Shown here piece by piece: positions 1 through 34,921 of a stretch of 64,000 bases of DNA. The DNA is from Adineta vaga (Eukaryota; Animalia; Rotifera): positions 4,960,001 through 5,024,000 of the forward strand of contig CP075494.1 in the NCBI GenBank assembly GCA_021613535.1, given 5' to 3'. The position numbers and the translations under genes are program-made. Under the pieces are notes generated by a model, which saw nothing but the letters and a program-made list of their open reading frames with translations, did not search any database and was not told the origin of the DNA. Position 1 is the stretch's first letter; each line of letters begins with the position of its first letter.

Positions 1-5
1 GAGAG

Positions 6-4043: not shown

Positions 4044-4530
4044 CATAATCTATTCCTTTATTCTGACGTATACTAAAAAAAGCTTCATTGGTAAATTTGT
4101 TACGAAAGTAACATGTATTCCAAACTATAAATTCCAAATATATTGTTAGTCACATATACTTCAGAAGAAAATGTAGAGAATGGCTGTTTGAATGAAATAA
4201 TTATCTGCGTGTCTATAATCATAAAACGTTACAAGATCAAAAACAGCTAAAGGCATGCAGCATATTGAAGTGCACACATCTTAAATTACAAGAAAAAAAC
4301 ATGCGACTGATATATTTTTTTGTGCTATAATACTTTTTCGTTCTGTATAAATTGAAGAAAAAATATGTAGATTATGAGAGTGAGTCGCACACACACACAA
4401 AAATATACAGAAATTCGGAAAGTGTAATTTCGTATTTAGATTATAGCACGTCGATATTGCTTTCAATCAACTAAAATCTAGTATAAGTTATCATTTCAAT
4501 AAATTACTATACTGTTGCTAATTCTGAATC

Positions 4531-10575: not shown

Positions 10576-11633
10576 TGATATCTAAAGCAAAATGATCATA
10601 TGTTGAGGAGTTGTTAAAAATTTTGTTCTTTATTAAATATTGATCATTGAATACAATATATTTTCTCTCTACTAAATGCGCAAGAAACACTAAAGTAAAA
10701 AAATGTGTAACTTGATTGTAAATATGTAATATTTTTTATAAACCTGCGTATGGAGAAAGGTAAGCTTACTTCCTTTTTCGTTTTATATACAGAAAGAAAA
10801 AGTTTTGTATAGATTTTCTATTCGCCGTGGGTTTTTTATAACTATATCATTTAGTTGTTTTTCTCTTTCATTTAACCCGAAAGAACAGATCAATAATCAA
10901 GGATTTACTATTGAAAATATTGAATTTTTCCGAAGAAAATAATCGATTGAGAGTGTGGGCATAACCAAGAATGTCTGTTATTCCTTTACATCGACATCTA
11001 AATCCTCTTTGCCAACCACTTCCATTCAAATTCTTAGTTTCTTAGCATTCAATTATGTTGTAAATAATTAGTTTTTTCCTTTTATCATTCAAATAATTTA
11101 CAATTTCTCACTGCGTATTCTTATTTGCTTCACTACACATGTGTAACCTACATTTCTGTTACTCCTTATGTTAAAATGACCATGTAAATAAAAGTATTTA
11201 TAAATTTGATGCATAATTAAAAATTGTTGGAAAATGCATTTCTTTTCGTCTCCATTTATGCTTGTATTATGGCAAATATCTATGTAATTATTTCAGAATA
11301 TATATTAGTTAGATAAATATTTTCTATGAACAAGTATCATTAACAAGATCTTAACTAAATGTGTTTCACTACCAAGTTTTAAAACAATCATTTTCCATTC
11401 ATACTAACTCTGAAGATAGGTGTGTTCCATTATGAAATAAGCAGATGAAATCGATATCAAGTTAGAAATAATGCGTACTAAGTCTATAACGGAAAGGTTA
11501 TCTTTCTTCAGCGAATCACTGTTTTTTTTTATCAAATCTGATATTTTCTTTGTGCTCAAAGCTTAAATGAATCTTTACTTTAAAGATCTGGAAACACAAA
11601 TACATTCATCGACTCATCTTTTTTATCTGCACC

Positions 11634-17952: not shown

Positions 17953-19445
17953 AATGACAAGAAACTTTAACGCATGAATGACGGCTAATTTGCTTTTGAC
18001 ACATACCTATAGAATCTTTATTTTTATGTTGCTTCTGCTTTTTTTATTTACTTCATCGTCTTGCTTATTGTTGAATAAAATGGATAAGAGACACTCACAC
18101 CCACCCTCACTCAGCGCTTTATTTGGTTGTCATACAGCGCAGCGACGAAGAAAATAACTGCAATAAGCATAACAAATGTGTTTGAAACAGGAGGAAAAAA
18201 GTTAACAATTTCTTCTGTCGTTATATGCCTATTAAACGAATTCCACCGACAAAAACAGTGTTCTGCTTTAGTTATGAATAGATTGTATCTAATTTTGTTA
18301 TCCTAGAGTACCATTTGCACATGATGAGCACAGTCATACAATTGTTTTCTGATGCAAATTTTACCCATTTTACCAAAGAAACTGTTGTGGTCATAAAAAA
18401 TAATTAATCAAACCATATTGATACTGTTGAACGCTTTGAGTTCTTTCAACGTATGAAGATTTTACTTACAGAGGTGCCATTATACTCAACTTCAATGACT
18501 TTTTAAATTACTGGACAATCTCGTTTAGAAATTATGGGGAAAGATTCTACTTATGGTATTAATCAATAGAGTAACGCAATATCGAAATCCCTATTTACAT
18601 ATAGAACAGGTTGGATTTATAAAGAATTATAGGCATAACATAAGAACTACGTAATTGTTTCATTGATTTTCAAGATATGTTCGGTAAAGTCGAGTACAAT
18701 AATATTATTTAGATTTTTCTGGAATTCTATGGCATAGATAACAAGATCGTCACATTGTTAAAGACAACTTTATAAAAAAATTCAATCTCTATAACAAGCA
18801 TAAGGTGTTTTGATAAACAGTATATGTTCTTGTAAATACGTTCACATGTTCATTATCAATCATAAGAAAATTGTGATAGACAATATACTTCAGTCACTTT
18901 TATTATCGATACAATGAAGGAAAAATATGTACAAATTTGAACAGCATCTAGTGGTTTTCGTAAATGATTTTTTACTATTATTGTAGACAAAAAAGGCGCC
19001 GCTTCACCGCCCAGTCAACCCGTACCCTTACACCATTTTTTGTTGTTTTATGATATCGACGTAATGTGATGGTATCAATGTTACGCTAGCGCGTGAGAAT
19101 CAATATATATGCGATCAAATTTCGATGTTTTGTCATCTGTCTATCAACTTCAGTGAAAAAACATTTGTAATAAGCATGAACAAGAAATACTATGCCATAA
19201 TAATTGATAGTTAATGTCTTGTGTCAACCATAACTTTTTTCTACTCCTGTGTTTCTCAGATACATATACATGCTGGGTACTATTATTTGAGGGCAATAGT
19301 TAATTATTTCCGTCTCTTCAAAATTCAAAACAACTTTCTTCGTCTCTCTCTTTTTCGTGTGCGTATATATACCTGTTCTCATAGTTCTCCAAACCACTTT
19401 TCAACAAACTCCAATTTTACTAGATACCAAATCATTACTAGCAAT

Positions 19446-19802
19446 ATGTCAATCGTTTGCCGTTCACCAATTCGTGTTGCTTGCACCACTGCAAGCTGTG
19501 ATACTGCTTGTACTCCTACGTGTGCTCCTACGTGTGCTCCTACATGTGCTCCTACTTGTGATCCATGTTGTGCTCCTACCTGTGATCCATGCTGTGATCC
19601 ATGTGATGTACCATGTGCTCCCAAATGCGGTGCACCATGTTGTCCAAAATGTGTCGTAACATGTGCTCAGAAATGCGTGGTACCATGTGCTCCTAAATGT
19701 GTTGTACGTACCACTGTATGCTACAAACCTGTAAAAGTCGTCAAAGTTATTAAAAAAACAACCATTATTCGTAAATCATGTCCCAAAGTTATGTGCTGCT
19801 GA
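19446..19802 (+). CDS. Small Cys/Pro-rich repetitive protein (118 aa; keratin-associated/metallothionein-like composition)
   Basis: ATG at 19446 downstream of a TATA-like tatatata (~19364); CAPT/CDPC/CAPK tetrapeptide repeats; basic C-terminus ending in CC; AATAAA after the stop. Confidence 0.75.
   Translation: MSIVCRSPIRVACTTASCDTACTPTCAPTCAPTCAPTCDPCCAPTCDPCCDPCDVPCAPKCGAPCCPKCVVTCAQKCVVPCAPKCVVRTTVCYKPVKVVKVIKKTTIIRKSCPKVMCC
19496..19700 (+). repeat. Coding 12-bp tandem repeat (tgtgctcctacN / tgtgatccatgN)
   Basis: Directly visible periodic repeat that encodes C-x-x-x units. Confidence 0.8.
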
Positions 19803-20105
19803 AAACATGAACAATTTACTTTTTTCCTATAAACTGATTCAATACCATATAGAATAAACCCGGGTAAAACATATCTACATTTTTTGTAAAGATGAGTACA
19901 CATAGCTTTTTGAGGATGTGGGTTTGGATGAAGGGTGATGACGATAGTATATCTATCTCGTATGTAAACTCATTCTCACCCATACCATCAAAATTATACT
20001 TCTTTTATGGTTTCTTTGTTTTTACAAAAAAAATAGCTTTGTAGTGTTATCGTACACCTTCACTCATATCGTATTCTTTTTCTGTCCATAAATGAAATAC
20101 AATCT

Positions 20106-22577
20106 TCACATTTGATTTGCATGACCGGCGGATCCGGTGTGAGTCATTAGACCAGCAACGATACAGTGTGAACCAGGTTTTTTCGTTGTACTGGAACTAT
20201 TGGTGTCATCAGTCGTATTTGACGATTTCTTAGGAACATAGCTGTTCGTAGCAGCTAGACTAAAATCATTTGTCGTAATAGATTTTAAATTTCTCTCTTC
20301 AGAATTTGCTGGATAATTGTCGGTTTCCATATCTTTCTTCTGAACATTTTTCATTCGGTATCGTAAACGTTTGATCAACGATTTTTTCGACATACCAATC
20401 TGTTCAGATACTTTCGAAGCCATATAACTAACGTTATCATCATAAAGAATCACAATCTTGTTGTATAACAAATCTTTTATCCAAGATCTTTTAAAATTAA
20501 AATCGGGCTCGGTGGTTACAACGACTAAGCCTTTCGTTTCATGTCTAGATTTATTGGTAGAGATTATATAAGATAATTCTTGAAATTTATCAGTATTGTC
20601 TTCATAAGCAGTTGATATTAAAATAATTACCACCGTTGCCGATATAATAACTGGAGATATATATTCCCACATATCTTCACCTAAGTCAACTTTTTCATAG
20701 TCGACCCAAATTGGTACTGTTACTTTCTTACGTAATTCCTTGATGAATGTTTTGCAAAAGTCTTCATTAGTACTATCATAACTGATATAGATCATTGGTA
20801 ACATTTCTTTTTGCGGTTTGTTGGGCACAATAATTTGCTGAATGTTACACCAAATACGCTTGGCATCGTCTCGGTTAGGACGATTAGCAAGACTTTCAAT
20901 GATTATACAAAATTGATTATTGTCAATTAATTGCTTGACATATTCTGGATAACTAGAAATTTGTAATAGAATCTTCAGTAAGTATTTGACAGCACGTTTT
21001 TCGAGTTCATCTGGTTCCGGATCTAGTAAAGCTCCGTATAGAATTAAAAGAAGTTCTGCAAAATATTGTATGGCTGTTGGTTTTTCATCGATCTTATTCT
21101 CCAGAATATGTTTGATAACATATGTATTTATGAAAGCACGATGTAATAATTCAAGTAATTCAGACAAATGATATCCATCACAGTTTAATTCAACATTTGC
21201 TTCAGCAGTTTTACATAATTGATAGAGCTTTACGCTAGTATCAAGGATAAGCTTTTTATTTTCTTCCGATTGTTCATCACTAGTAGCTAATGCGATCAAT
21301 GCTATACCAAAACTTTTTGTTAAATCTTCATCGTTTGTCTCATTGATTAATTGACTACATTCCATTAAAACATCGAAAGCCTTTTCTGTACGAAACTGTT
21401 TTAGACCTTTCTGATCTCGTGATAAATTGTAAATGATAGATATTATCGGATTACACAGAGAATCGATATGAGACTTGAATGTATCTGTACGAATCCATTG
21501 GATCGTTTTTTGAACATAACCCAGATTAATAAATATAGGTATTAATGGAATTTTATCCGTTAAATTCCATATAAGAAGTAAAATGCTACTTGTTACCGTT
21601 AACCGACCTGAAGAGACGTTTTCATTTGGAATAGTTAAACAATCATTGATAAATTCTTTGAAAGATATCATAAGAGAACTGTAATGATTTCCAAATTCAT
21701 ATTTTGATCGAATAACTGCTGCACTAAGAAATATGTTAGTATGTTCGATGTATTGTTGTAAGATGTCATGAAATTGAATTTTATTATCTTGTGGAGATTT
21801 TCTATTAGTTGTAGTCGAATCTAAATAATTTCAAACATGAATAGAGCGACATTTTATATGAGGATGAGTGAATCATGAGTATTACTTTATCTTTTTCTTA
21901 TAAAGAATAAAGATAAAATGACATCCTTACAATTCATACACAGCTCAATAGTAAATATTAACATGATTATTACCTATTGTTGATACTACTTCAGTTGAAT
22001 GAAGACGTTTACGACAATTTTCAATCAAATCATCTTTAATTAGATTCATAAACATGGCATCCAAGATATTGCTGGCATATATTGGAGAACACTCTTTTCT
22101 ATTATAAATACGTATTATCAAGTCATTTAAACTATTATACATTGATTGAAAGGATTTTTGTGATATGAGTAAATCGGATTCATCTATAGCAGAGATGCGC
22201 ATGATTGTATTTGATATCGTAATAAGAAGCATTGAACTTTTCTCAAAAGTCATTTGATCCCATATTTGATCGATATTTTTTGTCACATTATTAAAAATAT
22301 TTTCTATTTTGGAAATATTCGGATTAGTCAAATGAGTTGATAAATTTGAGAGTTCATTAATTTCCCGAAGAAGATTCATATAATTCAACTTTGTTGTTTT
22401 CTGTGTTGCCAAATTATCTTCTTCCATCTGAAATAAAAACATTTCTGCAATATCCCCAATTAGAGAAGGAGAGACGAAAACAAGAGTGTTGGGTGAAATC
22501 TCATCCATATCAAAACTAAATATAATACGGTTGCTGTAATAGTTAGCGCTGCCAAAAGCTACATAATACTCATGCAT
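20106..22577 (-). CDS. ARM/helical-repeat + TIR domain protein (2 exons)
   Basis: Intron 21821-21973 (GT-AG) joins the two ORFs in frame (STI|DSTTTN...SSLMISF); TIR motifs IYISYD, IWVDYE, MWEYI, VVIILISTAY..FQELSY. Confidence 0.82.
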
Positions 22578-23112
22578 GTCAAAAGAAAGTGGAGAAAGAA
22601 CAGGCTAGAGCTTCATGCATGTCAATCAATAAAGCTTAGATACGATTATTAAACGTCGCTGGTATTAATATAGAAAGTTCTTAATTTTCTCATTCTCAAC
22701 TCTATGAGACGTATATAACGATGAAAAGTGAGAAGATGTTTTAGAATTTTATCGCTAATAGAAAATTCCAGAAACGTCATATATCAAATAATGGTTTAGG
22801 AAAAAAATTATTTCACTGAAGACTCTTTTAACCGACGAAACATATTTAACAGAAAGATTACCGAAAAGAAAAGAGAATCAAGATCCAAGCTTTGCTTTCG
22901 ACATAAACGATCGTCAACTGGAAGAAAACCATAGCAATATGTCTTTTCTTTTTTCACGTCAAATATGTACTATCAAATTGTCTTGATCAACATCGGGTAC
23001 GCCCGCTCGTAGTCAAAAAACTGGATTTGCGACCTGACGAATAAAGTATAATTATTTATTCACCCTAAACATCAAGAAAACAAAATGTTGAAAGGAAAAA
23101 AAAGAAAATCAT

Positions 23113-23124
23113 TCTGATTGGCTA
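23113..23124. promoter_or_regulatory. CCAAT box (ctgattggct) in the divergent TIR/TRPM intergenic region
   Basis: Consensus NF-Y element (reverse AGCCAATCAG) between head-to-head genes. Confidence 0.35.
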
Positions 23125-23297
23125 GAAGGAGACGGCATATTGAAATACGCATTTAACACTGATGTAAAAACGATTCACCAAGGAGAACGTATGTGTGCTG
23201 TTTTAAAATGACTGATGACATAGCTTGGAGGACGTTGAAGAAAAGAAAAAAAGGCTTCATTCTTTCTCTAATGTTCTCGTTCTACCTTCCACACGTG

Positions 23298-23348
23298 TTT
23301 CTCTCTCTCTCTGTCTCTCTCTCTGTCTCTCTGTCTCTCTGTCTCTCC
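23298..23348. repeat. (CT)n/(CTGT) microsatellite
   Basis: tttctctctctctctgtctctctctctgtctctctgtctctctgtctctc. Confidence 0.9.
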
Positions 23349-23498
23349 TAGAAGAATGGAAATACCGCAGACATTTATTACATCTCAAAGCTTTGCACTG
23401 TTTCATAAAACTTCATTAAATTGATAAAAAAAATAATTTATAGTTACATTTTTCAGAACTAATTTGATCTATGTCAATATTTCAATTCATCAACTAGA

Positions 23499-26400
23499 AT
23501 GTCGAACGATGTACGTATGTCTACAAATTTGTTACTATTCTCATGTTCCTTTTTTTATTTTGTTTAGTCAATACCTTGGAGTGCTGCTATAGATCGATTG
23601 AAATTTCAGAAACGAGTATGTACAACATTCATTCCAAAAGAGTAAGTAATATTCAATTAAATGAACATTTTGAATAGAGATATGATATTCTATGGTAATT
23701 TAGAACAAATAAAGAATGTTGTATCTGCAATTATAATCATTCTGAAAGTGATGTTCCACGATTCAATGAAATATGGAATTGCAAAGAACATACAAAACAA
23801 GAAACTACCGATTTTTATGGATTACTTCCTCAATCGTATAGTCCTGTACGTTAAAAATAAGAAAAAGAAAACGATTGCAAATATTTTCTTAATTCTAGTA
23901 TTTGAGATGTGATATTGACACAGACTACGAACAACTCTGTTACGTATTGTTAGGTGTATGGAATATGGCTGTACCTGGTCTTATCATGCGAATGATAGGT
24001 GATATAGATACGACACCAAATATCAAAATAGAAAAGGAGCTTCTGCAAAGTATTTCGGATGCTGCTATTGCATCAGGTAAGCAAAAGTATAATAAGATAA
24101 ATTCATAGAATAAATGGTTATAAATTTCTATTCAGACGCATGGATTATTACGAATGGTTATAAGGAAGAGAGTATTTCAGAATTAATCGGTGAAGTAATG
24201 TACAATTGTAAAATTAAAAATCCTAACATGGATTTCAATGCGATTGCTGTTGGTAAATGGGGCAATATACATGAATGTCATAAAATGAAGGACAAGTTGT
24301 ATCAATTAGTTTTTTTTTCATTCGAAATTATATAAATATATATAATGACAGCTTTAGAAATTTCAACATACAATCTACAACACGCCAAGGTCATGGACGA
24401 TACAAACTGGAATTAAATCACACACACTACATATTTTTTGATGATGGTACATGTGATTCAGTTGATACAGGCGAATTTGCTTCAAATCTTGCTCGACAAA
24501 TATCTCGTGGAGCAAGACGAAGAAGTTAGTATTTTTTTATATTAACCTTTTCTGTATATGTACATACTTAAATTGTTTTGATTTAGTACCATTGATTACT
24601 GTGCTTGTTGGTGGTACTCCATATTCACTTTCGTCAATATATACTGATTTGAAGAAATTAATTCCAGTCGTCATTGTTGATGTAAGCTACACATATCGAT
24701 ACTAAATATAACTATTTAGTTTTCTTTGAATTCGTTAGGGATGTGGACCGTTGGCTAATATATTGTATAAATATCTGAAATTAACCGAAAGTGAGTGAAT
24801 TTTGTTATAATATCACATCATTTCTGAATATATATGCTCGTATGTTATCATTGAAGGTTCTTATAAATCATCGAAAAATCTAAATGAAAAGAATGATGCT
24901 CAAGATGACGCATCTAGTGATGTGTCTGATGATGACATCGATATAGCAATGATCGATGAAAACATACTTCTGCAATGTGATGATGATGATAATGTTGATG
25001 AAATTCCATCTTCATCAGCTAATGAAACGTAGATTTATAGAGAAAATTTCAATAATTTAAAATATCCTATTTGTATATATAGGTTAAGACACGTTTTGCG
25101 ACCACTCGGTAAATATCGTCTTGCTTTTGTTAACGATGTTCGACAACTTTATAATATCATACGACAGCAAGAATATGAAGCTCAAGGCAAAAGATTACCT
25201 ATCGGTGAATTATTGAGTTGGAATGAAGAGAAAAATCTTGGAAAATATTTATATCAAATGGCGAGCTGTTTAAATGCACCTTTGCGAGAAAATATTCATC
25301 TATTTAATATCGATTCATCGAAATCTTTAAAAGAAACATTATACTATGCGTTTGTTCAAGGTAAACTTTGAAATAGTGTGACATAAGTTTACATTAAAAA
25401 ATAAAATCATACGATATTGTTTTCCTAATTATAGCAAGAGACAATCTTTCACAAACGAAGAAAAAATATCACAAAACTATCGATGAACAAGTACATTTGG
25501 CACTTCGTTGGTGTATTAGTGATGCAGCAGAAAATCAATCAACAGCTGCTACAAAGATCTGGAATGATACCAAAAAAGTATACTCTTCATCTTGATTTCT
25601 ATCGTTTATCGGTTTTCATTGTAGATTAAACAAAATCGATTGCTTCTCATTGATGCACTTAGCAAAAATATGCTAATGTTTGTTATGAATTTTGTAAAAC
25701 TCGATATTGATTTTACCATTCTCTTTGATTCTATCGGTGTTTCATCGACAAGAGTTGCTACTCAGTGGTCTCATAAATACCATTATCTACAAGAATTATA
25801 CTCCGATACAAAGCGCAAAAATGTGAGAATAACATATATTGTATACGAATTAATAATACTTTCTGTTTTTTTAGCCTGATCCATTGTATTTACTGGATCA
25901 GATCAGTAGAAAACTCACTTTTACAGAGGAGAAACATTTAGCGATTGTTTTAGAAAAACTCGTAGGAGATTTTATGGAACCATTATATGGAGAGAAATCA
26001 AAAGTTGTATTAACATCATTAGAAACAGATGTCGAATATATTTATCGTGATCTTTTTCTTTGGTGCATACTAACCTGTCGACTTGATATGGCTAAAATCT
26101 TTTTAAGTCAATTGAAAACTCGGATTTGTTCGGCATTGATTGCTTCGAAAATTCTTAAATCATTAGCAGATTATGCACCGGATCAGTTTGCAAAAGATGC
26201 ATTGTATTCTAAAGCGAATGAATTTGAAACGCATGCCATCGAGTTTGTACGATGTGCTTATACCAATGATAAACATCAAGCATGTGAACTGATTATACGA
26301 CAGACAAAACTCTATGGAAATACTACATGTCTTCAAATGGCAATCGCTGCAGATAATAAGAAGTTTCTTCATGAAGATGCTTGTCAAGCTTTATTAACGA

Positions 26401-28993
26401 ATATATGGTATGATAAAGCGGATCCTGTCCGAGAACAAAACCGTCTTATTATTAATATACTTACATTGGGAATCTCTCAACTTTTCATATCGTTTTATAA
26501 GAAACACTTTTTCAAATATACTAAAGTGAAACCGGAAAATCAGGTAGATTGAACAAAGAATATTTGAAATATTTCCCTTTTATTCAATGATAGATGAACA
26601 GATCAGAGCAGCCAAAACGACCGTATGAATTTAATAAAAATGAAATATGTAAGGACTTTGATTTCAATCAGATCTCTACTTTAGATTGAACAAAAAAGGT
26701 ATTGACTATACTGACGATTATGATAGTGATGAAACGGTATTTCAACATTTTTTTCATTTTCACAATCGACCCATCGTCAAATATTGCTATAGTTGTGTAA
26801 ATTTGATAATGTTCAATAATATATTTTTCTACATTGTTTATATGATCGATTTCAGTTTGGTTATGTTCTTTTCCTGTTTTTCTTCAGTTATTATATGCTC
26901 TTTGCATTTGTTCCACTATCAAAAGATGTGTCCAGCATTCATTGGACAGAAATATTAATTATCATTACTATTAGTACGATGCTCTTCGAAGAAATTCGAC
27001 AGGTTTGTATTTCTATATTTTTTTTTTAATAAAATTCTAAGTCTTTGTCGGATTATAGTTGCTTTCTCAAGATGATCGATCGTTGATTGGCAAGATAAAG
27101 TTCTATTTTAATTTGAATAATCGAATATCCAATTTATGCCTAGTTTTACCGGCATATCTTCTATTCTATATTGGACTTGCACTTCGTTTTACACAGAAAA
27201 GTCCGGAAACCTTTGCATATGCACGGTAAACTTCATGATCATTTTTATATTCCAAACATTTTTCACTTCATTTTTCTACAGGATCATATTAGCTCTTGAT
27301 TTAGAATTATCATTTATTCGTTCAGTTTTATTCATTGGTATTGCTTCAAATCTGGGTCCAAAAATTGTGATGATTCGAAAAATGGTAGGTTTATTGGATA
27401 TGAATGAATACGATTTTGTACACCGCTTCATGTAGACAAACGATCTTCTATTATTCATAACTATTATTGTTATATTCATTTTCGCCTATGGAATCACATC
27501 AAGATCCATGATAGCGTACGGTACCATTGATTTTGATGGTCGAAAAATATTTCGTGATATTGTCTATCCCGTATATTATTTCGTTCATGGCAGTTTCGAT
27601 AATGAACGTACACAATTAGAAAGTAAATATATATATATATATAAACTATCATTAAATATTTATTTCTTTATTTCTTTAGCTACACCCGACAATAGTACGA
27701 CTATCGCCACACAAATTATATTCGCTTTTCATATGCTTTTTGTTAATATATTATTGATTAATTTACTTATTGCTTTATTCAGGTATGTGAAATAGAGAAA
27801 AATTACTTGAAGTAAGTTTTTATTTACAGTTTTACAATAAATGATGTTCAAACACAAGCACGTTATGTTTGGGCTTATGATCGTTATGAAATTATTCGTA
27901 CTTATTACAGTCGGCCAGCATTGTTTCCTCCATTTACATTTCTTATTTCAATGGTGCAATGTTGTCAATGGTGGGGGGAAAAAATCTACCACAATCGCTG
28001 TACAAATAAAAATTCTTATGATGAACCGTCTCAATGTTTTAGTAAGATTATTTTCATAATTCAAAATGCATGTAATTACCTAACTATGTTTTTGTTTTAG
28101 AAATGATTCCACTTAATGATGATGTTGATCATACATGGTCACAATTCGAGCGATATTCAACGAATGGTTACATTCGACAATTACTTGATGATCAAACGAC
28201 TGTCCTTGCCAAAGGAATGACTAATGATATTACGTAAGTCATCCGACCTAACTCCAAGGTTTTAGCGACGATATTACCTTTTATATACGATCAGATAGAG
28301 TCTTGAAAACTATTTTTAGTAAAAATTTGTTGTAAGAAATAGAGAACTTGAATTTTTCTGATATGTTTAATTTCTATACATATGTAGATCTGAATCGGCG
28401 TCATCAATCAATGCAGACGAATTAAAACGTATGAAAACTTTCATAAATAATGTTAAATACGATTTAGAAGATTCACGTAATGCGAATAATACAAAATTGG
28501 AGTCGATGAAAACTACTATTACTGATCTTCAATCACGATTTGGTCAAATGGAAAGTCGTTGTGACCGATGGATAAAAGAAATGAAAGAGGTTAGTTGGAT
28601 CTATTTTTGTCGTTTCGAATATCTTTGTTCGAAATATGAATATAGATAAAAACATCATTGAATTGGATGATGATGGCAATGGTAAATGCAAACATGGGTG
28701 AACCGGAACCCCCACTCATTCAAGTCACATCTAGTAAGTTGTTAGACATTTGATTTCTTTTCAAAGTTATAGAAACTCATTTGAAGTTTTCTTGTACCTT
28801 ATGAGATGCTTTATCATTGATGTCATTATTAGGAACAAGTTCATTCAGTCAAACTCAACACAATTATACTATCGATAATCGATCTAATGAACGGTTAAAT
28901 AAAGAACAATCATCGTTACAACAACGACGATCACCAACATCTGAAGTTCGTATTGAAATAATTCCTGGTAGAAACAATAATAGTGATGTTTAG
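23499..28993 (+). CDS. TRPM: TRPM-family cation channel (many exons; SLOG/MHR N-terminus, no NUDT9-H domain)
   Basis: FQKRVCTTFIP, AWIITNG, AIAVGKWG, LELNHTHYIFFDDG, VLVGG, DLFLWCIL, ICSALIASKIL, TCLQMA, ACQALLTNIWY, LGPKIVMIRKM, NILLINLLIALF, TRP box WAYDRY..YSRPALFPPF, coiled coil; stop TAG at 28991-28993. Confidence 0.9.
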
Positions 28994-29151
28994 AATTTTT
29001 CTTCGTTATTCATTATTGTAGCTTTTAATATAATAATAAATAGTCTATTCTCATTTGAAACATATCATATTTATCAATGCTTTGAAAATCTAACTTGGAT
29101 TGAAAAAAGGATATCAATAATCTCATCCATACTATATTTCAAGATTTTATT

Positions 29152-30081
29152 TTAACTTTTAGTCAGCCAGTAATACCAATCAGTAAAAATATTTACAGGA
29201 CGCATAAAATATTTGTGAAGATAATAGAACATAGGCGTATATGCGACTTTTACATTTGGATTGATATAAATACGATCGAATCCTAATTTCCAAAAATCTT
29301 TACATATAAAATAACATTCTGATTCATCATTTTCACCTGCTTCAAATTGTCTAAATCGTACATTATATTTCATGAATGGAATTGCATTCATGACAACCAT
29401 TCCATTCCATCCACAGTATACACGAACTGGTAAACCATATTTGACTAGTTTTTGATTGATAGAATTTTGAAAATACGGATAGTAGTCCATCAAGCCCTTT
29501 CCGTTCGAATCTCTCGTTACTAATGTATCGTAGAAAGCATAGTAGAAGTCTAGGCCACAAGCTAAGTCATATTCCATGTTATTTGTATTGATCAAATTAA
29601 TAATATCTGACAGTTTGTAGTAAATATCATTGAAGAAGATGATTTTTGTATTGTCCGAGTTCCAACTTAAGTTGAATAATGGTTTCAATGCTTCATTGCG
29701 GATGGCCGATAAATATTCGAATCGAGCCGGTGGTCGATTAATAACATGTTTCGTAATAATTGTATTTTGAATGTTAGCTTGATCTAACTTTATCTTAAAA
29801 GCATTCAATTGTGTTAAAGTGTTGTCTGTACTATCACCGTTTTCCATGATAGAAACAAAAACATTATCAGGTGTGAGTTCATCAATCAACAAGAGAAGTT
29901 GCTGTGTCCAGTTATCAAGGATATTCGAATTATCGTAGAGACAAGCAGCAATAAACCAGTTATAATTCGTTCTTCGTTCAATTAGCGTATTTTTCGTATG
30001 CATCCAAACATATAATATGCAAAAACAAAACACTATGAAGACAGATGAAGCTATTCTTTTTCTACGCACTGTTACTCTCAT
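29152..30081 (-). CDS. CAP59/GT69-family alpha-1,3-mannosyltransferase-like type II membrane protein, intronless
   Basis: N-terminal TM; VSIMENGDSTDNT, YLSAIRNEALKPL, IIFFNDI, DLACGLDF..FYDTLVTRD, VYCGWNG, SECYFICKD, IYINPNVKVAY. Confidence 0.85.
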   Translation of the reverse strand: MRVTVRRKRIASSVFIVFCFCILYVWMHTKNTLIERRTNYNWFIAACLYDNSNILDNWTQQLLLLIDELTPDNVFVSIMENGDSTDNTLTQLNAFKIKLDQANIQNTIITKHVINRPPARFEYLSAIRNEALKPLFNLSWNSDNTKIIFFNDIYYKLSDIINLINTNNMEYDLACGLDFYYAFYDTLVTRDSNGKGLMDYYPYFQNSINQKLVKYGLPVRVYCGWNGMVVMNAIPFMKYNVRFRQFEAGENDESECYFICKDFWKLGFDRIYINPNVKVAYTPMFYYLHKYFMRPVNIFTDWYYWLTKS

Positions 30082-30932
30082 TGTAAACTATAATTATCGA
30101 GATATATTGTACTTTGACAAAATGTGTTTAATTAAGATAACACGATCGGAGTCAGTTGCACCAAAATTATCAGAAATAGTTAATGGTTGTAATTATTTCG
30201 ATTGTAATGTTATTCTTTATTGATAAAACTCGTATTTTGTTCTTAGAAAAATGACTAGTGTTATGAATTCTACACAGCAAGTGAAATAAAAAATTGAAAA
30301 TTTCGTGTCTTTCATCCTTGGTAGTCGTCACGTTGAAAGAACACTTATAAGTGTATAAACAAAATTCTACACTCAATTCTTTCAACGTTGCACAATAAAC
30401 AATCAGCTTGGAGCACATGACATCAACTTGTGATGATGTAGATGTTGGAAGGAGTGAAGTGTGGGTGTCATAGAGATATGTATCTCATACGTTCAATCAA
30501 CCACACCTACAACCATTTATGGGAAAATAGCGTTGATCATAATGAATGTAATCAAGACCTTTTTATTCATCAATGGCAACTAGACAAACTAAAGGATATT
30601 CTATCATTTTTGAAAATTTGAATAGTTTGTATTACTGTTACAGATACCAATCAATTAACATGTAAGGATACTAGTAAGATTTATATTTATATGAAATTCA
30701 TGCCATCAGTTCGCCATATTCTGTCTAACTATGGATGGGAAAAAGTGAATGAAGAAAACATTGTTGTTGCTTGCATTTATTTTGACAACATGCAGTTTCT
30801 TTCTTCTCAGCAAGCATTGTGTAGAGTTTTTTCTCATTGGCTGTTTTTGTTTGTTTCTGCTAATGTGAACTGGTAAAGTATGAAAATGAAAGTAAGAATA
30901 AAAATTTTACTCCACTTTCTATTGAGACAAAC

Positions 30933-33302
30933 ATGGCTGAATATGAAAACAATATAAGCAAGGATAATGATAAAGACAATGCCGATTTATTGAAAATTAA
31001 TCAATTAATCAATCGTTTGGATGTATGTACAAGTTCGTTGGAAGAAAATTTGAACGAATCTGAAATCAATACTATATTAAATACTATGAAAGATTCTCTA
31101 AACAATTTGAAAATTCGAAAACGCTTAGCATCCAACAAAGATATCATTCAACAAAAATTGACTGATCTATTTAATCATTTTTGTCAAATTATAATTAAAT
31201 TTTCTTCATTATTACATAACTACCCATTATTTTTGGATGTTTTCATTACTATGTGGAATTTAATCAGCACAAAACTTGATGAATCAATTGAAAAAGAAAT
31301 TCTCTCTGCAAAAGAATTGTACATGACAGCAATCAACGGTTTGAGTATAGATCAGATTTCGATATATTTTTCTGGCAATGAAGTAGAAAATATATTTAAA
31401 AGTTGTGCAAAAATATTTGTCAAATTAGCACAGATTGTCATATGGTCAGATACTCGACGAACAGAATATCTAAATCTGACCGATTATATGTCCTATAAAT
31501 GTATACATAAAATGAAATATGATAATATATTTCATAAAATTATTTTATTTGTGGATTATTGTTTCACTCAAATCAAAACTAGTACAGATCAAAATGATTG
31601 TATTGCAACAATATTCTCTCTTATCGTAACAATGTCGGACAGTAAAGGCTTTTTACCTACAACAATTCGAATTGGACTTCCAGCAAAATTAGTCGAATGG
31701 TTAAATATAGTCACTAAAAAATCAATTACATTTAATCCACTTTCATCAATTATTGTTTCAATAAGTAATATAAGCCAATGTGAGGAAGGTATAATCGCAC
31801 TGAACAAAGCTGATGCAATCACTGTTCTATGCACATCGGAAAAACTATTAGCCGAGAGACTACAAAAGTCTCCATTTATTTTATCGTTTTATCCTCGAAT
31901 CTATGCGATGCTAGCCACAACGGATCAACTCAAAACTTTACCAGTTCTCGAGCCGGCTATTGATCATTTACTGATGAAAATTCATGAAGCAAATGCGGCA
32001 AAAAATTTACGTTCATCCACCGGTCATCTCTATGAATATTTAGTGCCTCTTGCTAAACTTGTCATCAATGATAATATGGCGAAATATTTACTAAATAATG
32101 TTAAATTCGGAGGTCTTGCTTTTTTTATTGAACTTTTTCATAAACATAATCTGGTTTCAACGAATGATCTCTTTGTCAAACATCTTATTCGATTAGCACT
32201 GTATAATATCTTATGTAGTCTCTCGTTTCATCAAACTGTTCAACAAGAATTAAAAGAAAATCAAATATTCATAAAAGCTGTTATGGAAGCATCACATTCA
32301 TCAACATCAAATAATGAAGCATTTATTCCATCATCATTTAGAAATGATTTAATGACGGTTAAAGCTGCTGCTGACGGTATATTGGTCTATCTTGATCAAT
32401 TCAAGGCACCTACATCGGATAATAACAATGTTATTAGCAAATCTACAACAAAGATTCCGATGATATCCTATTCACATAAAGATGCTAATTTTTGTCGATC
32501 AATTGTCACTGCTCTCAAAGAACATTCTATTTCCGTCTGGATCGATGAAGATGGACATTGCTTGTCGGACGATTGTTGGGAAGAGATAGCAGTTGCGATC
32601 AAAAATGCTAGTATGGTATTGATTGTTGTCTCAGATAATTATTGCACGAAAAGTGATTCATGCCGTGTCGAAGCTACTTATGCTATAAAACTCAAGATTC
32701 CAATTGTTGCTCTATATATCGATGATAAATATCAGGCAGAACCTTGGCTCGACATTCATCTTACAGGATTACATGTTAAATTTGGTCAAAAATCATTTGC
32801 TGAAAGAATCAGTCGGCTCGCTAAATATATAACTGCGCGAAACAACACATCGGAAGTAACAGAAACATTACGAGCAGAACATCCGTCTCATGAAGTCAAC
32901 CTAGTACCTATCGAAGAATCAAAGCCGGCTATATTAACAAGCAAGAGGCCTGAAGATGTGATTGATTATTCAGTGCCAAAAACATCACCACACACATGGT
33001 CAGCCATTGAAGTACGATCTTGGTGGTGTAGCGAAAAGAAACTTGTACCTCAACTATGTAACTTTTGTGATGGTGAAGCACTTTGTGTATATGCTCGATT
33101 GTTTACAAGTTCCTATCAGGAAAATCCTTTGAAACATTTTCAAATACTTCAAGCACGATTAAAACAACAGCATAACATCGATTTCTACGATGATCAATAT
33201 GCAAATATCGTCAGTTCTATGATGTGGACCGTAAAACAATACGGAAAGTCAGAACAAATTGTACCTAATCGGCAACAATCGATTTCATGTATCCTCTTAT
33301 AA
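30933..33302 (+). CDS. ARM/helical-repeat + TIR + SAM-like protein with C-terminal CaaX, intronless
   Basis: TIR: MISYSHKD, VWIDE, WEEIAVAIKNA, VSDNY..SDSCRVEATYA; SAM-like PHTWSAIEVRSWW...DGEAL; ends in CILL*. Confidence 0.87.
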   Translation: MAEYENNISKDNDKDNADLLKINQLINRLDVCTSSLEENLNESEINTILNTMKDSLNNLKIRKRLASNKDIIQQKLTDLFNHFCQIIIKFSSLLHNYPLFLDVFITMWNLISTKLDESIEKEILSAKELYMTAINGLSIDQISIYFSGNEVENIFKSCAKIFVKLAQIVIWSDTRRTEYLNLTDYMSYKCIHKMKYDNIFHKIILFVDYCFTQIKTSTDQNDCIATIFSLIVTMSDSKGFLPTTIRIGLPAKLVEWLNIVTKKSITFNPLSSIIVSISNISQCEEGIIALNKADAITVLCTSEKLLAERLQKSPFILSFYPRIYAMLATTDQLKTLPVLEPAIDHLLMKIHEANAAKNLRSSTGHLYEYLVPLAKLVINDNMAKYLLNNVKFGGLAFFIELFHKHNLVSTNDLFVKHLIRLALYNILCSLSFHQTVQQELKENQIFIKAVMEASHSSTSNNEAFIPSSFRNDLMTVKAAADGILVYLDQFKAPTSDNNNVISKSTTKIPMISYSHKDANFCRSIVTALKEHSISVWIDEDGHCLSDDCWEEIAVAIKNASMVLIVVSDNYCTKSDSCRVEATYAIKLKIPIVALYIDDKYQAEPWLDIHLTGLHVKFGQKSFAERISRLAKYITARNNTSEVTETLRAEHPSHEVNLVPIEESKPAILTSKRPEDVIDYSVPKTSPHTWSAIEVRSWWCSEKKLVPQLCNFCDGEALCVYARLFTSSYQENPLKHFQILQARLKQQHNIDFYDDQYANIVSSMMWTVKQYGKSEQIVPNRQQSISCILL

Positions 33303-33878: not shown

Positions 33879-34921
33879 ATGAATAATTCTTTATTTGACT
33901 TTTTATTCCAAAGATCAATGTTTACAAATACTTCACAGACAGAAAATTCAGATTCTTTTATAATTATAATCATTCCTCTATCTATTAAATTCTGGACATA
34001 TCTTATTTCCAATATTTTATCTATTTCATGTTGTTTATTTGTTCTCTTTCATCTTTGTTTCGATCGAGGGCTTCGTCAAGCACTCAATAATCATCTTATT
34101 ATTGTTCTTCTTATCGTTGATCTTACTTATGAACTCACCTATATTTCATGGACTCTTTATCAATCACATAATGGTGTATCTTGGATAAAAACCTCGATTT
34201 TCTATTTATTCACTTATTTTTTGATTATGGATCATTTTCAACACATGTAGGTTTATTTTGTTGGATGACTATCGAACGACATATTCTTATTTTTCATGAT
34301 CAATGGGTATCAACTCGACGAAAACGTTTCTTCGTTCATTATTTACCTATTTTACTCATTCTTCTCTATCGTTTACTTTATTTCTCCTTAGTTCTTTTTC
34401 ATTCATCTTGTATCAACGCATATGATATATTTGTCATTACTGGAGATTTTATACCATGTGCATTTGATAGAACAAATCTTGAAACATACGATTTATTTTT
34501 CCATCAAGTTATTCCAACATTAATTATTATATTTTCTGGTGCAATGTTCATAGTTCGTATTTTTTTACAAAAGCAAAGAGCAAGAGGAACAATGTCTTGG
34601 CGTCGATATCGAAAGATGATTATTCAATTGTTATCAATTGCAACAGTTTATTTACTTTTTAATTTACCATGGACAGTTGCAGCTATTCTGATACAATTCA
34701 TTATATCAGAAGTCGTTGGTCGAATAATAATGCCTTATGTCGTTTATTTTCGCGTGTATGTAATCTTTTCATTTCCATATGTATGTTTGGCATCATCATC
34801 AGAACTAAAAAAGAAATTGAAACGAATTCTATCTCGACAGCAACGACGTATATTTCCTGACAATTATTTAGACATGGCTAATCGAATCGTTCGACCAGCT
34901 GTCAATATTCAACGATTGTAA
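33879..34921 (+). pseudogene. Divergent 7TM GPCR interrupted by a 1-nt frameshift (pseudogene or assembly error)
   Basis: Two overlapping ORFs carry TM1-2 (RQALNNHLII) and TM3-7 (WMTIERHILIF, KMIIQLLSI, FNLPW); one extra T in the T6 run at 34217-34222 would fuse them. Confidence 0.75.

What the first reader, a model, noticed from the sequence alone, without database searches (positions are those of the whole stretch)
20106..33302. Thoeris-like logic in an animal: TIR gene head-to-head with a SLOG-domain TRPM channel, with a second TIR gene on the far side
Seen: ARM-TIR (-) and TRPM (+) start codons face away from each other ~920 bp apart, and a second ARM-TIR-SAM gene starts ~1.9 kb after the TRPM stop. 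Both TIRs keep the catalytic-position Glu (FQELSY; SCRVEATYA). The TRPM keeps SLOG/MHR1-2 motifs (WIITNG, GKWG, NHTHYIFFDDG, VGG) and lacks NUDT9-H. Known: enzymatic TIRs (SARM1, ThsB) cleave NAD+ to ADPR-type messengers; ThsA senses them via SLOG; TRPM2 binds ADPR in MHR1/2. Inference: a linked sensor-TIR, nucleotide messenger and cation-channel effector module for immunity or cell death.
Basis: partly seen in the sequence, partly recalled or inferred. Interest (0 to 1): 0.85.

Follow-up and report, generated by a model that had tools for sequence, protein, structure and literature searches.

The report
Conserved rotifer TIR–TRPM channel gene pair
In bdelloid rotifers, a gene for a TRPM ion channel with an altered nucleotide-sensing domain is kept back to back with a gene for an armadillo-TIR protein (a likely NAD-cleaving enzyme). 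This gives a natural system for testing whether TIR enzymes signal to ion channels in animals.

Summary
The window is Adineta vaga, chromosome-scale contig C5.

**What is real.** An ARM-TIR gene (-) and a multi-exon SLOG-TRPM gene (+) lie head to head. Both are transcribed and spliced.

- TIR1 has an extra 5' exon, so its ATG is at 22427.
- The TRPM ATG is inferred at 23499, so the starts are 1,072 bp apart, not about 920.
- A CAP59 glycosyltransferase gene lies between the TRPM and the second TIR gene.

**The pair is conserved.**
- It occurs three times in A. vaga, as mutually closest paralogues.
- It recurs in A. ricciae, A. steineri, Rotaria magnacalcarata and metagenomic bdelloid contigs. 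In all, 10 of 13 loci carry it.
- Flanking genes are not shared between these loci.

**The second TIR gene is not part of the unit.** Its orthologues have no TRPM neighbour.

**Protein features:**
- The putative catalytic Glu of the TIR is kept in 62 of 63 homologues.
- The N-terminal domain folds as armadillo repeats.
- The channel has no NUDT9-H domain.
- All four TRPM2 ADP-ribose contact residues are replaced by clade-specific, conserved residues, while unlinked A. vaga TRPMs keep them.
- A complex prediction supports docking of the ARM domain onto the channel's SLOG region (score 0.66, best control 0.00).

**Verdict.** This is a real, apparently unpublished channel–TIR module. The Thoeris-like messenger step is plausible but untested. 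The scan had already noted the two paralogous loci elsewhere in this genome.

The parts
20106..21820 (-). TIR1 gene, 3' coding exon. It holds the C-terminal armadillo repeats, the TIR domain (putative catalytic Glu in FQELSY, E566 of P0001) and a low-complexity tail. The stop codon is at 20106-20108.
   Evidence: TIR_2 E 9.7e-10. The ORF is 100% identical to P0001, A. vaga I4U23_023373. Spliced RNA contigs cover 20106-21820. TIR fold pLDDT 82. ARM fold pLDDT 91.
21821..21973 (-). TIR1 intron, 153 nt, GT..AG on the minus strand.
   Evidence: The joint 21820>21974 appears in three RNA runs.
21974..22427 (-). TIR1 5' coding exon, with the ATG at 22427-22425.
   Evidence: RNA contigs. P0001 is 722 aa and starts MEEDNLATQ. 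The CAT at 22425-22427 was checked. The exon is conserved in the A. ricciae, Rotaria and A. steineri loci.
22428..23498 (.). Shared divergent intergenic region, a candidate bidirectional promoter of 1,071 bp. It contains a CT-rich simple repeat at about 23288-23348 and, in one run, a possible TIR1 5'UTR exon starting near 22862.
   Evidence: Joint 22427>22862 in run X1 only, and the repeat note. ATG positions.
23499..23845 (+). TRPM 5' exons: inferred ATG exon (23499-23510), then 23568-23642 (conserved N-terminal motif WSAAIDRLKFQKRVCTTFIPKE), then 23705-23845 (Cys/His motif).
   Evidence: Manual GT..AG reading. Colinear tblastn with the Rotaria socialis proteins P0066 and P0226. RNA contigs from 23705 and the joint 23845>23899.
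23899..24790 (+). TRPM SLOG / MHR1-2 exons: 23899-24072(+4), 24132-24295, 24352-~24523, ~24586-24681, 24739-24790. They carry the clade-specific YKEE loop, DDGTCDSVDTGEFASNLA, the basic GARRR loop, VLVGG and GCGPLA.
   Evidence: RNA joints. LSDAT_euk pieces. Orthologue P0066 matches LSDAT_euk at 2.6e-26. Residue mapping against drTRPM2, nvTRPM2 and TRPM8.
24857..26549 (+). TRPM linker and MHR3/4 exons: 24857-25358, 25433-25577, 25625-25822, 25875-26549.
   Evidence: RNA joints. TRPM2-like domain PF25508 at 1.9e-32.
26662..28646 (+). TRPM transmembrane, pore, TRP-helix and C-terminal coiled-coil exons. Exact splice sites and the stop codon were not determined; the stop lies at or before about 28993. 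There is no NUDT9-H domain.
   Evidence: Colinear tblastn with P0226 and P0227 up to 28234. Pore and coiled-coil exons match the orthologous loci. No NUDIX hit. Orthologue proteins of 1243-1342 aa have no NUDIX domain.
29152..30081 (-). CAP59-family mannosyltransferase gene, a single ORF. It is NOT part of the module. It lies between the TRPM and TIR2.
   Evidence: PF11735 at 4.6e-62. It is absent from all orthologous and paralogous pair loci.
30933..33302 (+). TIR2 gene, 789 aa: a helical N-terminal region colinear with the TIR1 ARM, a TIR domain with the Glu in RVEATYA, and a C-terminal region that may be SAM-like. It is NOT part of the conserved unit.
   Evidence: TIR_2 at 3e-17. 25% identity to TIR1. 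Orthologues at 58-72% identity in A. steineri and Rotaria spp., with neighbourhoods that lack a TRPM.

Best explanation
The TIR1 gene and the TRPM gene form a conserved two-gene module specific to bdelloid rotifers. It encodes a specialised TRPM-family cation channel and a dedicated armadillo-TIR partner protein.

**Shown**
- The genes are divergent, 1.07 kb apart, and both are transcribed and spliced.
- The pair was duplicated as a unit. It has stayed together in Adineta and Rotaria while the surrounding genes changed.
- The TIR domain keeps the Glu at the position that is catalytic in NAD-cleaving TIRs.
- The channel's SLOG pocket was remodelled in the ancestor of the TIR-linked clade and has been conserved since.

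**Inferred**
- The ARM domain docks on the channel's N-terminal/SLOG surface. A conserved acidic loop (YG-LLDPEPDELE) faces a clade-specific basic loop (GARRR) next to the pocket.
- C-terminal CaaX or PDZ-ligand-like motifs keep the partner at the membrane.
- A tetrameric channel would bring TIR domains close together. By established knowledge of SARM1, plant TNL resistosomes and SPARTA, such proximity is what switches TIR NADases on.

**Favoured direction, speculative**
- The TIR cleaves NAD+, and a product other than plain ADP-ribose binds the remodelled SLOG pocket and opens the channel. This would be a locally wired, Thoeris-like step.

**My odds**
- Any functional coupling of the two proteins: about 0.65-0.75.
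- Direct physical complex: about 0.5.
- Catalytically active TIR: about 0.55.
- A TIR product gates the channel through SLOG: about 0.25-0.3.

The confidence value given for this explanation refers to the module being a physically or functionally coupled channel-TIR unit, not to the speculative gating direction.
For: **Co-duplication**
- The closest paralogues of both TIR1 (39-40% identity) and the TRPM (62%) lie together at C1:16.63 Mb and at C5:2.09 Mb.

**Cross-species conservation**
- The pair is present in A. ricciae L007 (gap 438 bp), R. magnacalcarata L008-L010, A. steineri L011, and the metagenomic bdelloid contigs L012, L017, L018 and L019/L020. Counting the window, 10 of 13 distinct loci carry it, always divergent.
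- No colinear similarity exists outside the pair.
- The TIR tree has two clades at 100/100 support. Both contain paired loci, and the TRPM tree is broadly congruent.

**Expression**
- Spliced RNA contigs of both genes occur in the same three runs.

**Protein features**
- Glu E566 is kept in 62 of 63 homologues.
- The TIR fold's best matches include the SPARTA TIR, AbTir, plant TIRs and SARM1.
- The N-terminal domain has an armadillo-repeat fold.
- C-terminal CaaX or STWV motifs are present.
- The SLOG pocket residues are replaced and conserved within the linked clade, whereas the unlinked A. vaga TRPMs keep TRPM2-like Y, RxR and GSGR.

**Complex prediction**
- Score 0.66, best of 3 controls 0.00. 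The mark was reached by 51 of 78 solved complexes and 2 of 108 mismatched pairs. On eukaryotes it was 39 of 65 solved pairs and 2 of 126 unrelated pairs.
- The runs agree in at least 58% of their contacts, and the partner's pLDDT is at least 76.
- The interface includes the invariant residues H369, Y413, G414, E425, L462 and R465.

**Precedent for the idea**
- It is already published that SLOG binds TIR-made gcADPR in ThsA, and that TRPM channels might respond to TIR products.
Against: - No biochemical or physiological data exist.
- A Glu at this position is also kept in some non-enzymatic TIRs (my knowledge of TLR TIR domains), so it does not prove NADase activity.
- All four residues that bind ADP-ribose in TRPM2 are lost. 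The pocket may therefore bind nothing, or something unrelated.
- 3 of 13 TIR1-family loci have no TRPM within 10 kb (L013, L016, L014/15).
- A shared bidirectional promoter could by itself preserve a divergent pair.
- The complex prediction has limits. It is a model's own confidence. It used congeneric rather than conspecific chains (R. socialis TRPM with R. magnacalcarata TIR). It was run without alignments. In addition, 7 of 44 blindly chosen neighbouring gene pairs also pass this test.
- Interface conservation is only slightly above the ARM average (0.72 against 0.67).
- The TRPM tree rests on one short exon and has weak support.
- Nothing links the module to immunity or cell death.
Confidence: 0.6

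Rival explanations
1. The module is the same but the direction is reversed. The channel is the sensor and the ARM-TIR is the effector. Channel opening, Ca2+ entry or a conformational change in the MHR1/2 domain would release or assemble the docked TIR domains. These would then deplete NAD+ or start a kinase cascade, as SARM1/TIR-1 acts downstream of Ca2+ signalling in C. elegans (my knowledge).
For: - The evidence of linkage, co-duplication and docking is the same as for the best explanation.
- The ARM-TIR architecture recalls SARM1, where the ARM domain holds the TIR in check.
- Loss of the TRPM2 ADP-ribose contacts weakens the case for nucleotide gating.
Against: - The SLOG pocket region is strongly conserved within the clade. 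That fits a retained ligand site.
- There are no SAM domains to build a SARM1-like ring.
- The Ca2+-site residues were not resolved here.
Confidence: 0.2
2. The pair reflects co-regulation only. It would be held together by a shared 1-kb bidirectional promoter, or by being duplicated as one small segment. The two proteins might act in the same cells but would not touch or signal to each other.
For: - Divergent orientation with a short gap in every species: 438-1,072 bp between annotated or inferred starts.
- Both genes are expressed in the same RNA runs.
- Three TIR1-family loci exist without a TRPM.
Against: - The pair is retained in two deeply split clades and two genera, while every flank differs.
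- The channel has clade-specific changes, the YKEE and GARRR loops, exactly in the domain predicted to contact the partner.
- The complex prediction passes its controls.
Confidence: 0.2
3. One reading: TIR1, the TRPM and TIR2 together form one sensor-messenger-effector locus.
For: - TIR2 is 1.9-2.3 kb beyond the TRPM and keeps the Glu.
- A uniform expectation for a TIR gene that close is only about 1-2%.
Against: - An unrelated CAP59 gene intervenes.
- TIR2 orthologues (58-72% identity) in A. steineri and Rotaria sp. Silwood1 sit beside other genes, and tblastn finds no TRPM there.
- No TIR2-like gene lies next to the pair in A. ricciae, Rotaria, the ENA loci or the two A. vaga paralogous loci.
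Confidence: 0.05
4. The adjacency is chance, arising from two expanded gene families: at least 86 TIR loci and about 33 TRPM loci in 100.8 Mb.
For: - Both families are large.
- At family level only 3 of 33 TRPM loci have a TIR within 10 kb, against 0.56 expected. Those three are not independent of each other.
Against: - The same two subfamilies are paired at 10 of 13 loci across at least five species or assemblies, always in the same orientation.
Confidence: 0.03

Closest known systems
Type I Thoeris (ThsB TIR + ThsA SIR2-SLOG) of bacteria
   Same: - A TIR protein is encoded next to a protein with a SLOG domain.
- In Thoeris the TIR makes a cyclic ADPR isomer that binds SLOG and activates the effector.
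- As in many Thoeris loci, extra TIR copies accumulate beside the effector: the tandem TIRs in A. steineri and the partial copy at C5:2.09 Mb.
   Different: - This is an animal locus with separate, divergently transcribed, intron-containing genes.
- The effector is a tetrameric cation channel, not a SIR2 NADase.
- The TIR carries an armadillo domain that is predicted to dock on the SLOG domain.
- No evidence of common descent of the pair was found. Products, ligand and immune role are untested.
TRPM2 (ADP-ribose- and Ca2+-gated channel; invertebrate and choanoflagellate TRPM2 'chanzymes')
   Same: - TRPM architecture with N-terminal SLOG/MHR1-2, MHR3/4, six transmembrane helices plus a TRP helix, and a coiled coil.
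- PDB matches to TRPM2 from zebrafish, Nematostella and human at about 1e-36.
- A channel coupled to an NAD-metabolite enzyme.
   Different: - No NUDT9-H domain.
- The equivalents of M215, Y295, R302 and R358 are S, V/L, A and P/Q.
- The SLOG region scores at least as well against TRPM8 as against TRPM2.
- The enzyme is a TIR encoded by a separate neighbouring gene, not a fused Nudix or kinase domain.
SARM1 / TIR-1 (ARM-SAM-SAM-TIR NADase)
   Same: - An N-terminal armadillo-repeat domain and a TIR_2-type TIR domain with the conserved Glu.
- SARM1 chains are among the structural matches of the TIR model.
   Different: - No SAM domains were detected in TIR1.
- SARM1 is not among the top 50 fold matches of the ARM model.
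- Sequence similarity is too low for any PDB sequence hit better than E 0.2.
- The family is restricted to bdelloids in the searches made.

Membership tests
TRPM channel family | N-terminal SLOG (LSDAT_euk) plus the TRPM homology region, an ion-transport domain, a TRP helix and a C-terminal coiled coil | tested here: met
   - PF25508 at 1.9e-32 on exon 25875-26549.
- Colinear LSDAT_euk pieces on the window exons.
- Orthologue P0066: LSDAT_euk at 2.6e-26. P0067: Ion_trans at 2e-05, 24.4 bits, just under Pfam's 25-bit cut-off.
- S4-S6 and the TRP helix align to nvTRPM2, TRPM1 and TRPM3.
- A coiled-coil exon lies at 28371-28646.
TRPM2-type ADP-ribose-gated channel | ADP-ribose contact residues of the MHR1/2 site: human M215, Y295, R302 and R358 (PMC6759353) | tested here: not met
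   - The HMMER alignment to drTRPM2 (7aov) places S, L/V, A and Q/P at these positions.
- The dr-to-human numbering offset is a constant 24.
- The unlinked A. vaga TRPMs keep Y, RxR and GSGR.
TRPM2-type ADP-ribose-gated channel | C-terminal NUDT9-H (Nudix) domain | tested here: not met
   - No NUDIX hit in the C-terminal frames at E<=1.
- The annotated orthologues (1243-1342 aa) carry only LSDAT, TRPM2-like and a weak YVC1_C hit.
Enzymatic (NAD+-cleaving) TIR domains | TIR fold with the conserved catalytic Glu | tested here: met
   - TIR_2 at 9.7e-10.
- The model (pLDDT 82) matches the SPARTA TIR, AbTir, RUN1, L6, RPS4 and SARM1.
- The Glu aligns with the Glu of RPS4 'VRELEKI'.
- It is kept in 62 of 63 homologues.
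- The Glu is necessary but not sufficient for activity.
Enzymatic (NAD+-cleaving) TIR domains | Measured NADase or cyclase activity, and identity of the products | not testable with these tools
   This needs expression, an NAD+ consumption assay and LC-MS.
Thoeris-like TIR-to-SLOG signalling system | A TIR gene genomically coupled to a gene for a SLOG-domain effector | tested here: met
   A conserved divergent pair at 10 of 13 loci, across Adineta and Rotaria.
Thoeris-like TIR-to-SLOG signalling system | A TIR-made nucleotide binds SLOG and activates the effector; the system has a defence function | not testable with these tools
   Only indirect evidence is available: the pocket region is conserved within the clade but differs from TRPM2.
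SARM1 family | ARM + tandem SAM + TIR architecture | tested here: not met
   - The ARM fold is met and the TIR is met.
- No SAM domain is found in TIR1 by Pfam at E<=1.
- In TIR2 a C-terminal SAM is only a weak lead.
Prenylated (CaaX) proteins | C-terminal Cys-aliphatic-aliphatic-X | tested here: inconclusive
   - Present in the clade B partners, including both A. vaga paralogues (CTLM, CILM, CTIM, CTVM).
- Absent from the window's own TIR1, which ends in ANQM. Its orthologues end in STWV.

The most novel reading that the evidence does not exclude
Bdelloid rotifers carry a natural, pre-assembled 'trans-chanzyme'. A membrane-tethered ARM-TIR NADase sits on the SLOG domain of a dedicated TRPM channel. 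Its NAD-derived product, not plain ADP-ribose, gates the channel through a remodelled SLOG pocket. This would be an animal counterpart of Thoeris signalling with an ion channel as effector. It would also be the first direct case of a TIR product acting on a TRPM channel.
Probability: 0.27. Interest if true: 0.9.

Novelty: new variant of a known kind. Interest (0 to 1): 0.78.

Why it matters
**The open question.** It has been asked in print whether TIR-made nucleotides act on animal SLOG-domain channels. Examples are the discussion of SARM1 gcADPR products (PMC11025887) and the ThsA/TRPM2 SLOG superposition (10.1101/2021.01.06.425286). No natural system has pointed to a specific enzyme–channel pair.

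**What this locus offers.** Evolution has kept one TIR subfamily and one TRPM subfamily together, through duplications and across genera. The channel's nucleotide pocket changed at the time of pairing. There is a predicted docking surface that can be mutated.

**How it could be tested.** Two cDNAs, a Glu-to-Ala control and a patch-clamp rig would make the question directly testable.

**If coupling is confirmed.**
- It would add an ion-channel effector to the TIR signalling repertoire.
- It would show a new way of building a channel–enzyme unit, in trans rather than fused.
- It would inform the debate on how SARM1-type NADases connect to Ca2+ entry.

**If it is only co-regulation.** It remains a clean example of a deeply conserved bidirectional gene pair in genomes with otherwise little microsynteny.

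Tried and rejected
1. **Short SLOG exon against PDB sequences.** No hit. I used the natural orthologue proteins P0066, P0067 and P0226 instead.
2. **Pfam search for ARM or SAM in TIR1 and TIR2 at E<=1.** Nothing found. ARM was then shown by fold for TIR1 only. SAM remains a weak language-model lead at 0.78.
3. **Family-level TIR–TRPM adjacency.** Only the three co-duplicated loci qualify. Within 10 kb, 3 loci were observed against 0.56 expected. Within 20 kb it was 3 against 1.11, and within 50 kb 4 against 2.7. There is therefore no general enrichment.
4. **Extended synteny around the pair.** tblastx of the whole window against eight loci gave only noise outside 20000-29100. The exceptions were generic TIR and NHL-repeat similarity.
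5. **TIR2 as a module member.** Rejected on the orthologue context.
6. **TIR1-family loci without a TRPM within 10 kb.** These are L013, L016 (ENA contigs) and L014/L015 (Rotaria sp. Silwood2). Linkage is therefore frequent but not universal.
7. **PDB sequence search with the TIR-family profile.** Only marginal hits at E 0.2-1: a SEFIR protein, RPS4 and L6.
8. **Literature.** Four searches found no report of a TIR–TRPM gene pair or of bdelloid TIR/TRPM biology.
9. **Ca2+-site and selectivity-filter residues.** The alignment covered only S4-S6, so the Ca2+ site is unresolved. The filter residue after the conserved Gly is S or K instead of Q or E.
10. **Joined TRPM model.** I did not build or search one. 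Exons were searched by reference, one at a time. In one search, RNA-supported exons were concatenated inside a script only to check the reading frame.
11. **Tool limits.** Read laying was given 5,795 letters.

Full report
**Organism and setting.** The window is G000:C5:4960001-5024000 of a 100.8-Mb, six-contig assembly. The TIR1 ORF is 100% identical to 'hypothetical protein I4U23_023373 [Adineta vaga]', so this is the bdelloid rotifer Adineta vaga. GC content is about 31% and introns are about 50-75 nt.

**Checking the observation.** Pfam confirms two TIR_2 genes:
- 20106-21671 (-), E 9.7e-10.
- 30933-33302 (+), E 3e-17.

It also confirms a TRPM on the plus strand: exon 25875-26549 hits the TRPM2-like domain at 1.9e-32.

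Logan contigs of three runs lie on the stretch with canonical GT..AG joints on the strand of each gene. The runs are therefore RNA, and both genes are transcribed and spliced.

The TRPM N-terminus was read exon by exon against Rotaria socialis proteins and by splice-site inspection. The ATG is inferred at 23499, followed by 23568-23642 and 23705-23845. The start codons are thus 1,072 bp apart, not about 920.

Between the TRPM 3' end (at or before about 28993) and TIR2 lies an intronless CAP59-family mannosyltransferase gene on the minus strand (PF11735, 4.6e-62).

The quoted SLOG motifs are present. No Nudix domain is found.

Exons were searched by reference, and natural orthologue proteins served as proxies. 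A concatenation was used only to check the reading frame inside a script.

**Is the adjacency more than chance?** At the level of whole gene families, hardly. The genome has at least 86 TIR_2 loci and about 33 TRPM loci. Only three TRPM loci have a TIR within 10 kb, against 0.56 expected.

Those three loci are special, however. The closest paralogues of TIR1 (39-40% identity) are at C1:16.63 Mb and C5:2.09 Mb. The closest paralogues of the TRPM (62% in the MHR exon, the next best being 47%) are at exactly the same two places. The arrangement there is again divergent. None of the flanking genes (CAP59, TIR2, the GPCR, the Cys-rich ORF) is shared.

Across species, the TIR1 homologues that carry names come only from Adineta and Rotaria; the rest are unnamed metagenomic sequences. 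Their genomic contexts show a TRPM head to head with the TIR at these loci:
- A. ricciae (gap 438 bp).
- R. magnacalcarata (three assemblies).
- A. steineri (with two tandem TIR copies).
- Four metagenomic bdelloid contigs.

Three loci show no TRPM within 10 kb. Counting the window, 10 of 13 distinct loci carry the pair.

A maximum-likelihood tree of the TIR proteins splits into two clades at 100/100 support, and each contains paired loci. Clade A holds the window, the Adineta orthologues and R. magnacalcarata. Clade B holds the two A. vaga paralogues, a Rotaria sequence and metagenomic contigs. The TRPM tree rests on one exon and has weak support, but it groups the same loci.

The pair therefore predates the A/B duplication, and probably the Adineta–Rotaria split. 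It has been inherited as a unit.

**The second TIR gene.** TIR2 is a well-conserved gene: 58-72% identity in A. steineri and in several Rotaria species, plus an A. vaga paralogue. In A. steineri and Rotaria sp. Silwood1 it sits beside unrelated genes, and tblastn finds no TRPM exons there. No TIR2-like gene flanks the pair in any other locus. Its position here is best read as coincidence.

**The TIR partner.** Three features stand out.
- *TIR domain.* The model (42-sequence alignment, pLDDT 82) is a canonical TIR. Its best matches are the SPARTA TIR-APAZ, MyD88, plant TNL TIRs, AbTir and SARM1. The Glu of FQELSY (E566 of P0001) aligns with the Glu of RPS4 'VRELEKI'. It is kept in 62 of 63 family members, which are otherwise 35-65% identical.
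- *N-terminal domain.* The 280 residues before the TIR fold with pLDDT 91 as armadillo repeats. Pfam sees no ARM or SAM domain.
- *C-termini.* Clade B proteins end in a CaaX box (CTIM, CTVM, CTLM, CILM). Clade A proteins end in ...TGSxxxSTWV, which resembles a class-I PDZ ligand. The A. vaga copy in this window ends in ANQM. Both motifs suggest targeting to the membrane or to a scaffold.

**The channel.** The Rotaria socialis orthologue P0066 matches LSDAT_euk at 2.6e-26. It also matches solved TRPM2, TRPM8, TRPM5 and TRPM4 structures at 1e-36 to 1e-28, so it is a TRPM but not clearly a TRPM2 orthologue.

The human TRPM2 MHR1/2 site uses M215, Y295, R302 and R358 (PMC6759353). In the HMMER alignment to zebrafish TRPM2 (chain numbering offset by a constant 24 from human), these positions in the TIR-linked clade are:

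| Human TRPM2 residue | TIR-linked clade |
|---|---|
| M215 | S |
| Y295 | V/L/I/M/T |
| R302 | A (I or T in some) |
| R358 | P (Q in Rotaria, S in one contig) |

The glycine-rich loop is replaced by a clade-specific TNGYKEES loop. A basic GARRR loop follows the DDG motif. These features are conserved across both clades and both genera.

By contrast, three unlinked A. vaga TRPMs (C3:13.0 Mb, C6:1.88 Mb, C6:4.40 Mb) keep the TRPM2-like Y, RxR and GSGR motifs wherever the segment was found. So the pocket was remodelled in the ancestor of the TIR-linked clade and has been kept since. This argues against plain ADP-ribose sensing. It is compatible with a new ligand or with a new protein contact.

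**Physical coupling.** I tested one pair: the R. socialis TRPM N-terminus (residues 1-470) with the R. magnacalcarata ARM-TIR (residues 220-659).
- The model supports binding: score 0.66, best of 3 controls 0.00.
- The mark was reached by 51 of 78 solved complexes and 2 of 108 mismatched pairs. On eukaryotes it was 39 of 65 solved pairs and 2 of 126 unrelated pairs.
- The runs agree in at least 58% of their contacts, and the partner's pLDDT is at least 76.
- The interface joins three channel surfaces to the last ARM repeats. The channel surfaces are the N-terminal motif (19-25), the start of the SLOG domain (94-112) and the GARRR loop (250-255).
- The ARM side includes the conserved acidic YG-LLDPEPDELE loop and the invariant residues H369, Y413, G414, E425, L462 and R465.

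Caveats:
- This is a model's own confidence, not a measurement.
- The chains come from congeners, not from one species.
- 7 of 44 blindly chosen neighbouring gene pairs also pass this test.
- Interface conservation is only slightly above the domain average.

**Mechanism.**
- *Shown:* a conserved, co-duplicated, co-expressed divergent pair; a TIR with the Glu at the catalytic position; an ARM domain; a SLOG-TRPM with a remodelled but conserved pocket.
- *Inferred:* the ARM-TIR protein is a dedicated partner that docks on the channel's SLOG region at the membrane. A tetrameric channel would cluster TIR domains. By established knowledge of SARM1, plant resistosomes and SPARTA, clustering is what activates TIR NADases.
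- *Speculative:* a TIR product binds the remodelled pocket and gates the channel. The reverse direction (channel state or Ca2+ switching the TIR on) and mere co-regulation remain live rivals.

Nothing here bears on immunity or cell death.

**Comparison and novelty.** The logic resembles type I Thoeris (TIR next to a SLOG effector) and TRPM2 chanzymes (a channel plus an NAD-metabolite enzyme). Membership of the TRPM2 ligand class fails on two tested features. SARM1 membership fails on the SAM domains. Common descent with Thoeris is not shown.

The idea that TIR products could act on TRPM SLOG domains is published speculation. I found no report of a conserved TIR–TRPM gene pair.

Earlier notes of this scan had flagged the two paralogous loci, and one follow-up reached a similar reading. 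I re-derived those loci independently.

I rate this as a new variant of a known kind, with high interest because it makes an open question directly testable.

Noticed in passing
window 29152-30081 (-): An intronless CAP59-family (cryptococcal-type) mannosyltransferase gene (PF11735, 4.6e-62) lies convergent with the TRPM 3' end. It is a fungal-type enzyme in a bdelloid and a candidate horizontally acquired gene. It is absent from every orthologous or paralogous pair locus.
   Followed up: partly
P0051, P0055-P0063; L003:4716-6233; L004:4791-6305: TIR partners of clade B end in a CaaX box (CTIM, CTVM, CTLM, CILM), which predicts prenylation. Clade A partners end in a conserved ...TGSxxxSTWV, which resembles a PDZ ligand. 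The A. vaga copy in this window ends in ANQM instead.
   Followed up: partly
window 27436-27792 (+); P0067: In the pore loop, the residue after the conserved Gly is Ser in A. vaga (FVHGSF) and Lys in R. socialis (VLGKF). Solved TRPMs have Gln or Glu there. The ion selectivity of this clade cannot be predicted.
   Followed up: no
G000:C5:2093139-2093624 (L004); L011:3569-5092 and 10001-11518: Extra TIR copies accumulate beside the pair. There is a partial copy with four stop codons between the TRPM and the TIR at the C5:2.09 Mb paralogous locus. There are two full tandem TIR genes in A. steineri.
   Followed up: partly
G000:C3:13.0 Mb (L025), C6:1.88 Mb (L026), C6:4.40 Mb (L023): Unlinked A. 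vaga TRPM paralogues keep TRPM2-like ADP-ribose contact motifs: Y and RxR after DDGT, and GSGR. C6:4.40 Mb gives the best LSDAT/TRPM2 scores in the genome and may be the true TRPM2-like gene. The TRPM family is large here, at about 33 loci.
   Followed up: partly
window 19221-19802 (+) and 33879-34921 (+): A Cys-rich ORF with CAPTC-type repeats lies convergent with the TIR1 3' end; RNA contigs run about 690 nt past the TIR1 stop towards it. A rhodopsin-type 7TM receptor gene follows TIR2. A 7tm_1 gene also follows the TIR genes in A. steineri L011.
   Followed up: no
window 1-923 and 39058-41709 (earlier notes); L002/L006 region 1917-4329 of the C5:2.09 Mb stretch: According to earlier, unchecked notes, the window also holds genes that look immune-related: a SIR2-NLR-like gene and an MLKL-like kinase with an NHL propeller. 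NHL-repeat similarity also appears near the C5:2.09 Mb paralogous pair (tblastx up to 65 bits), but it is not colinear.
   Followed up: no
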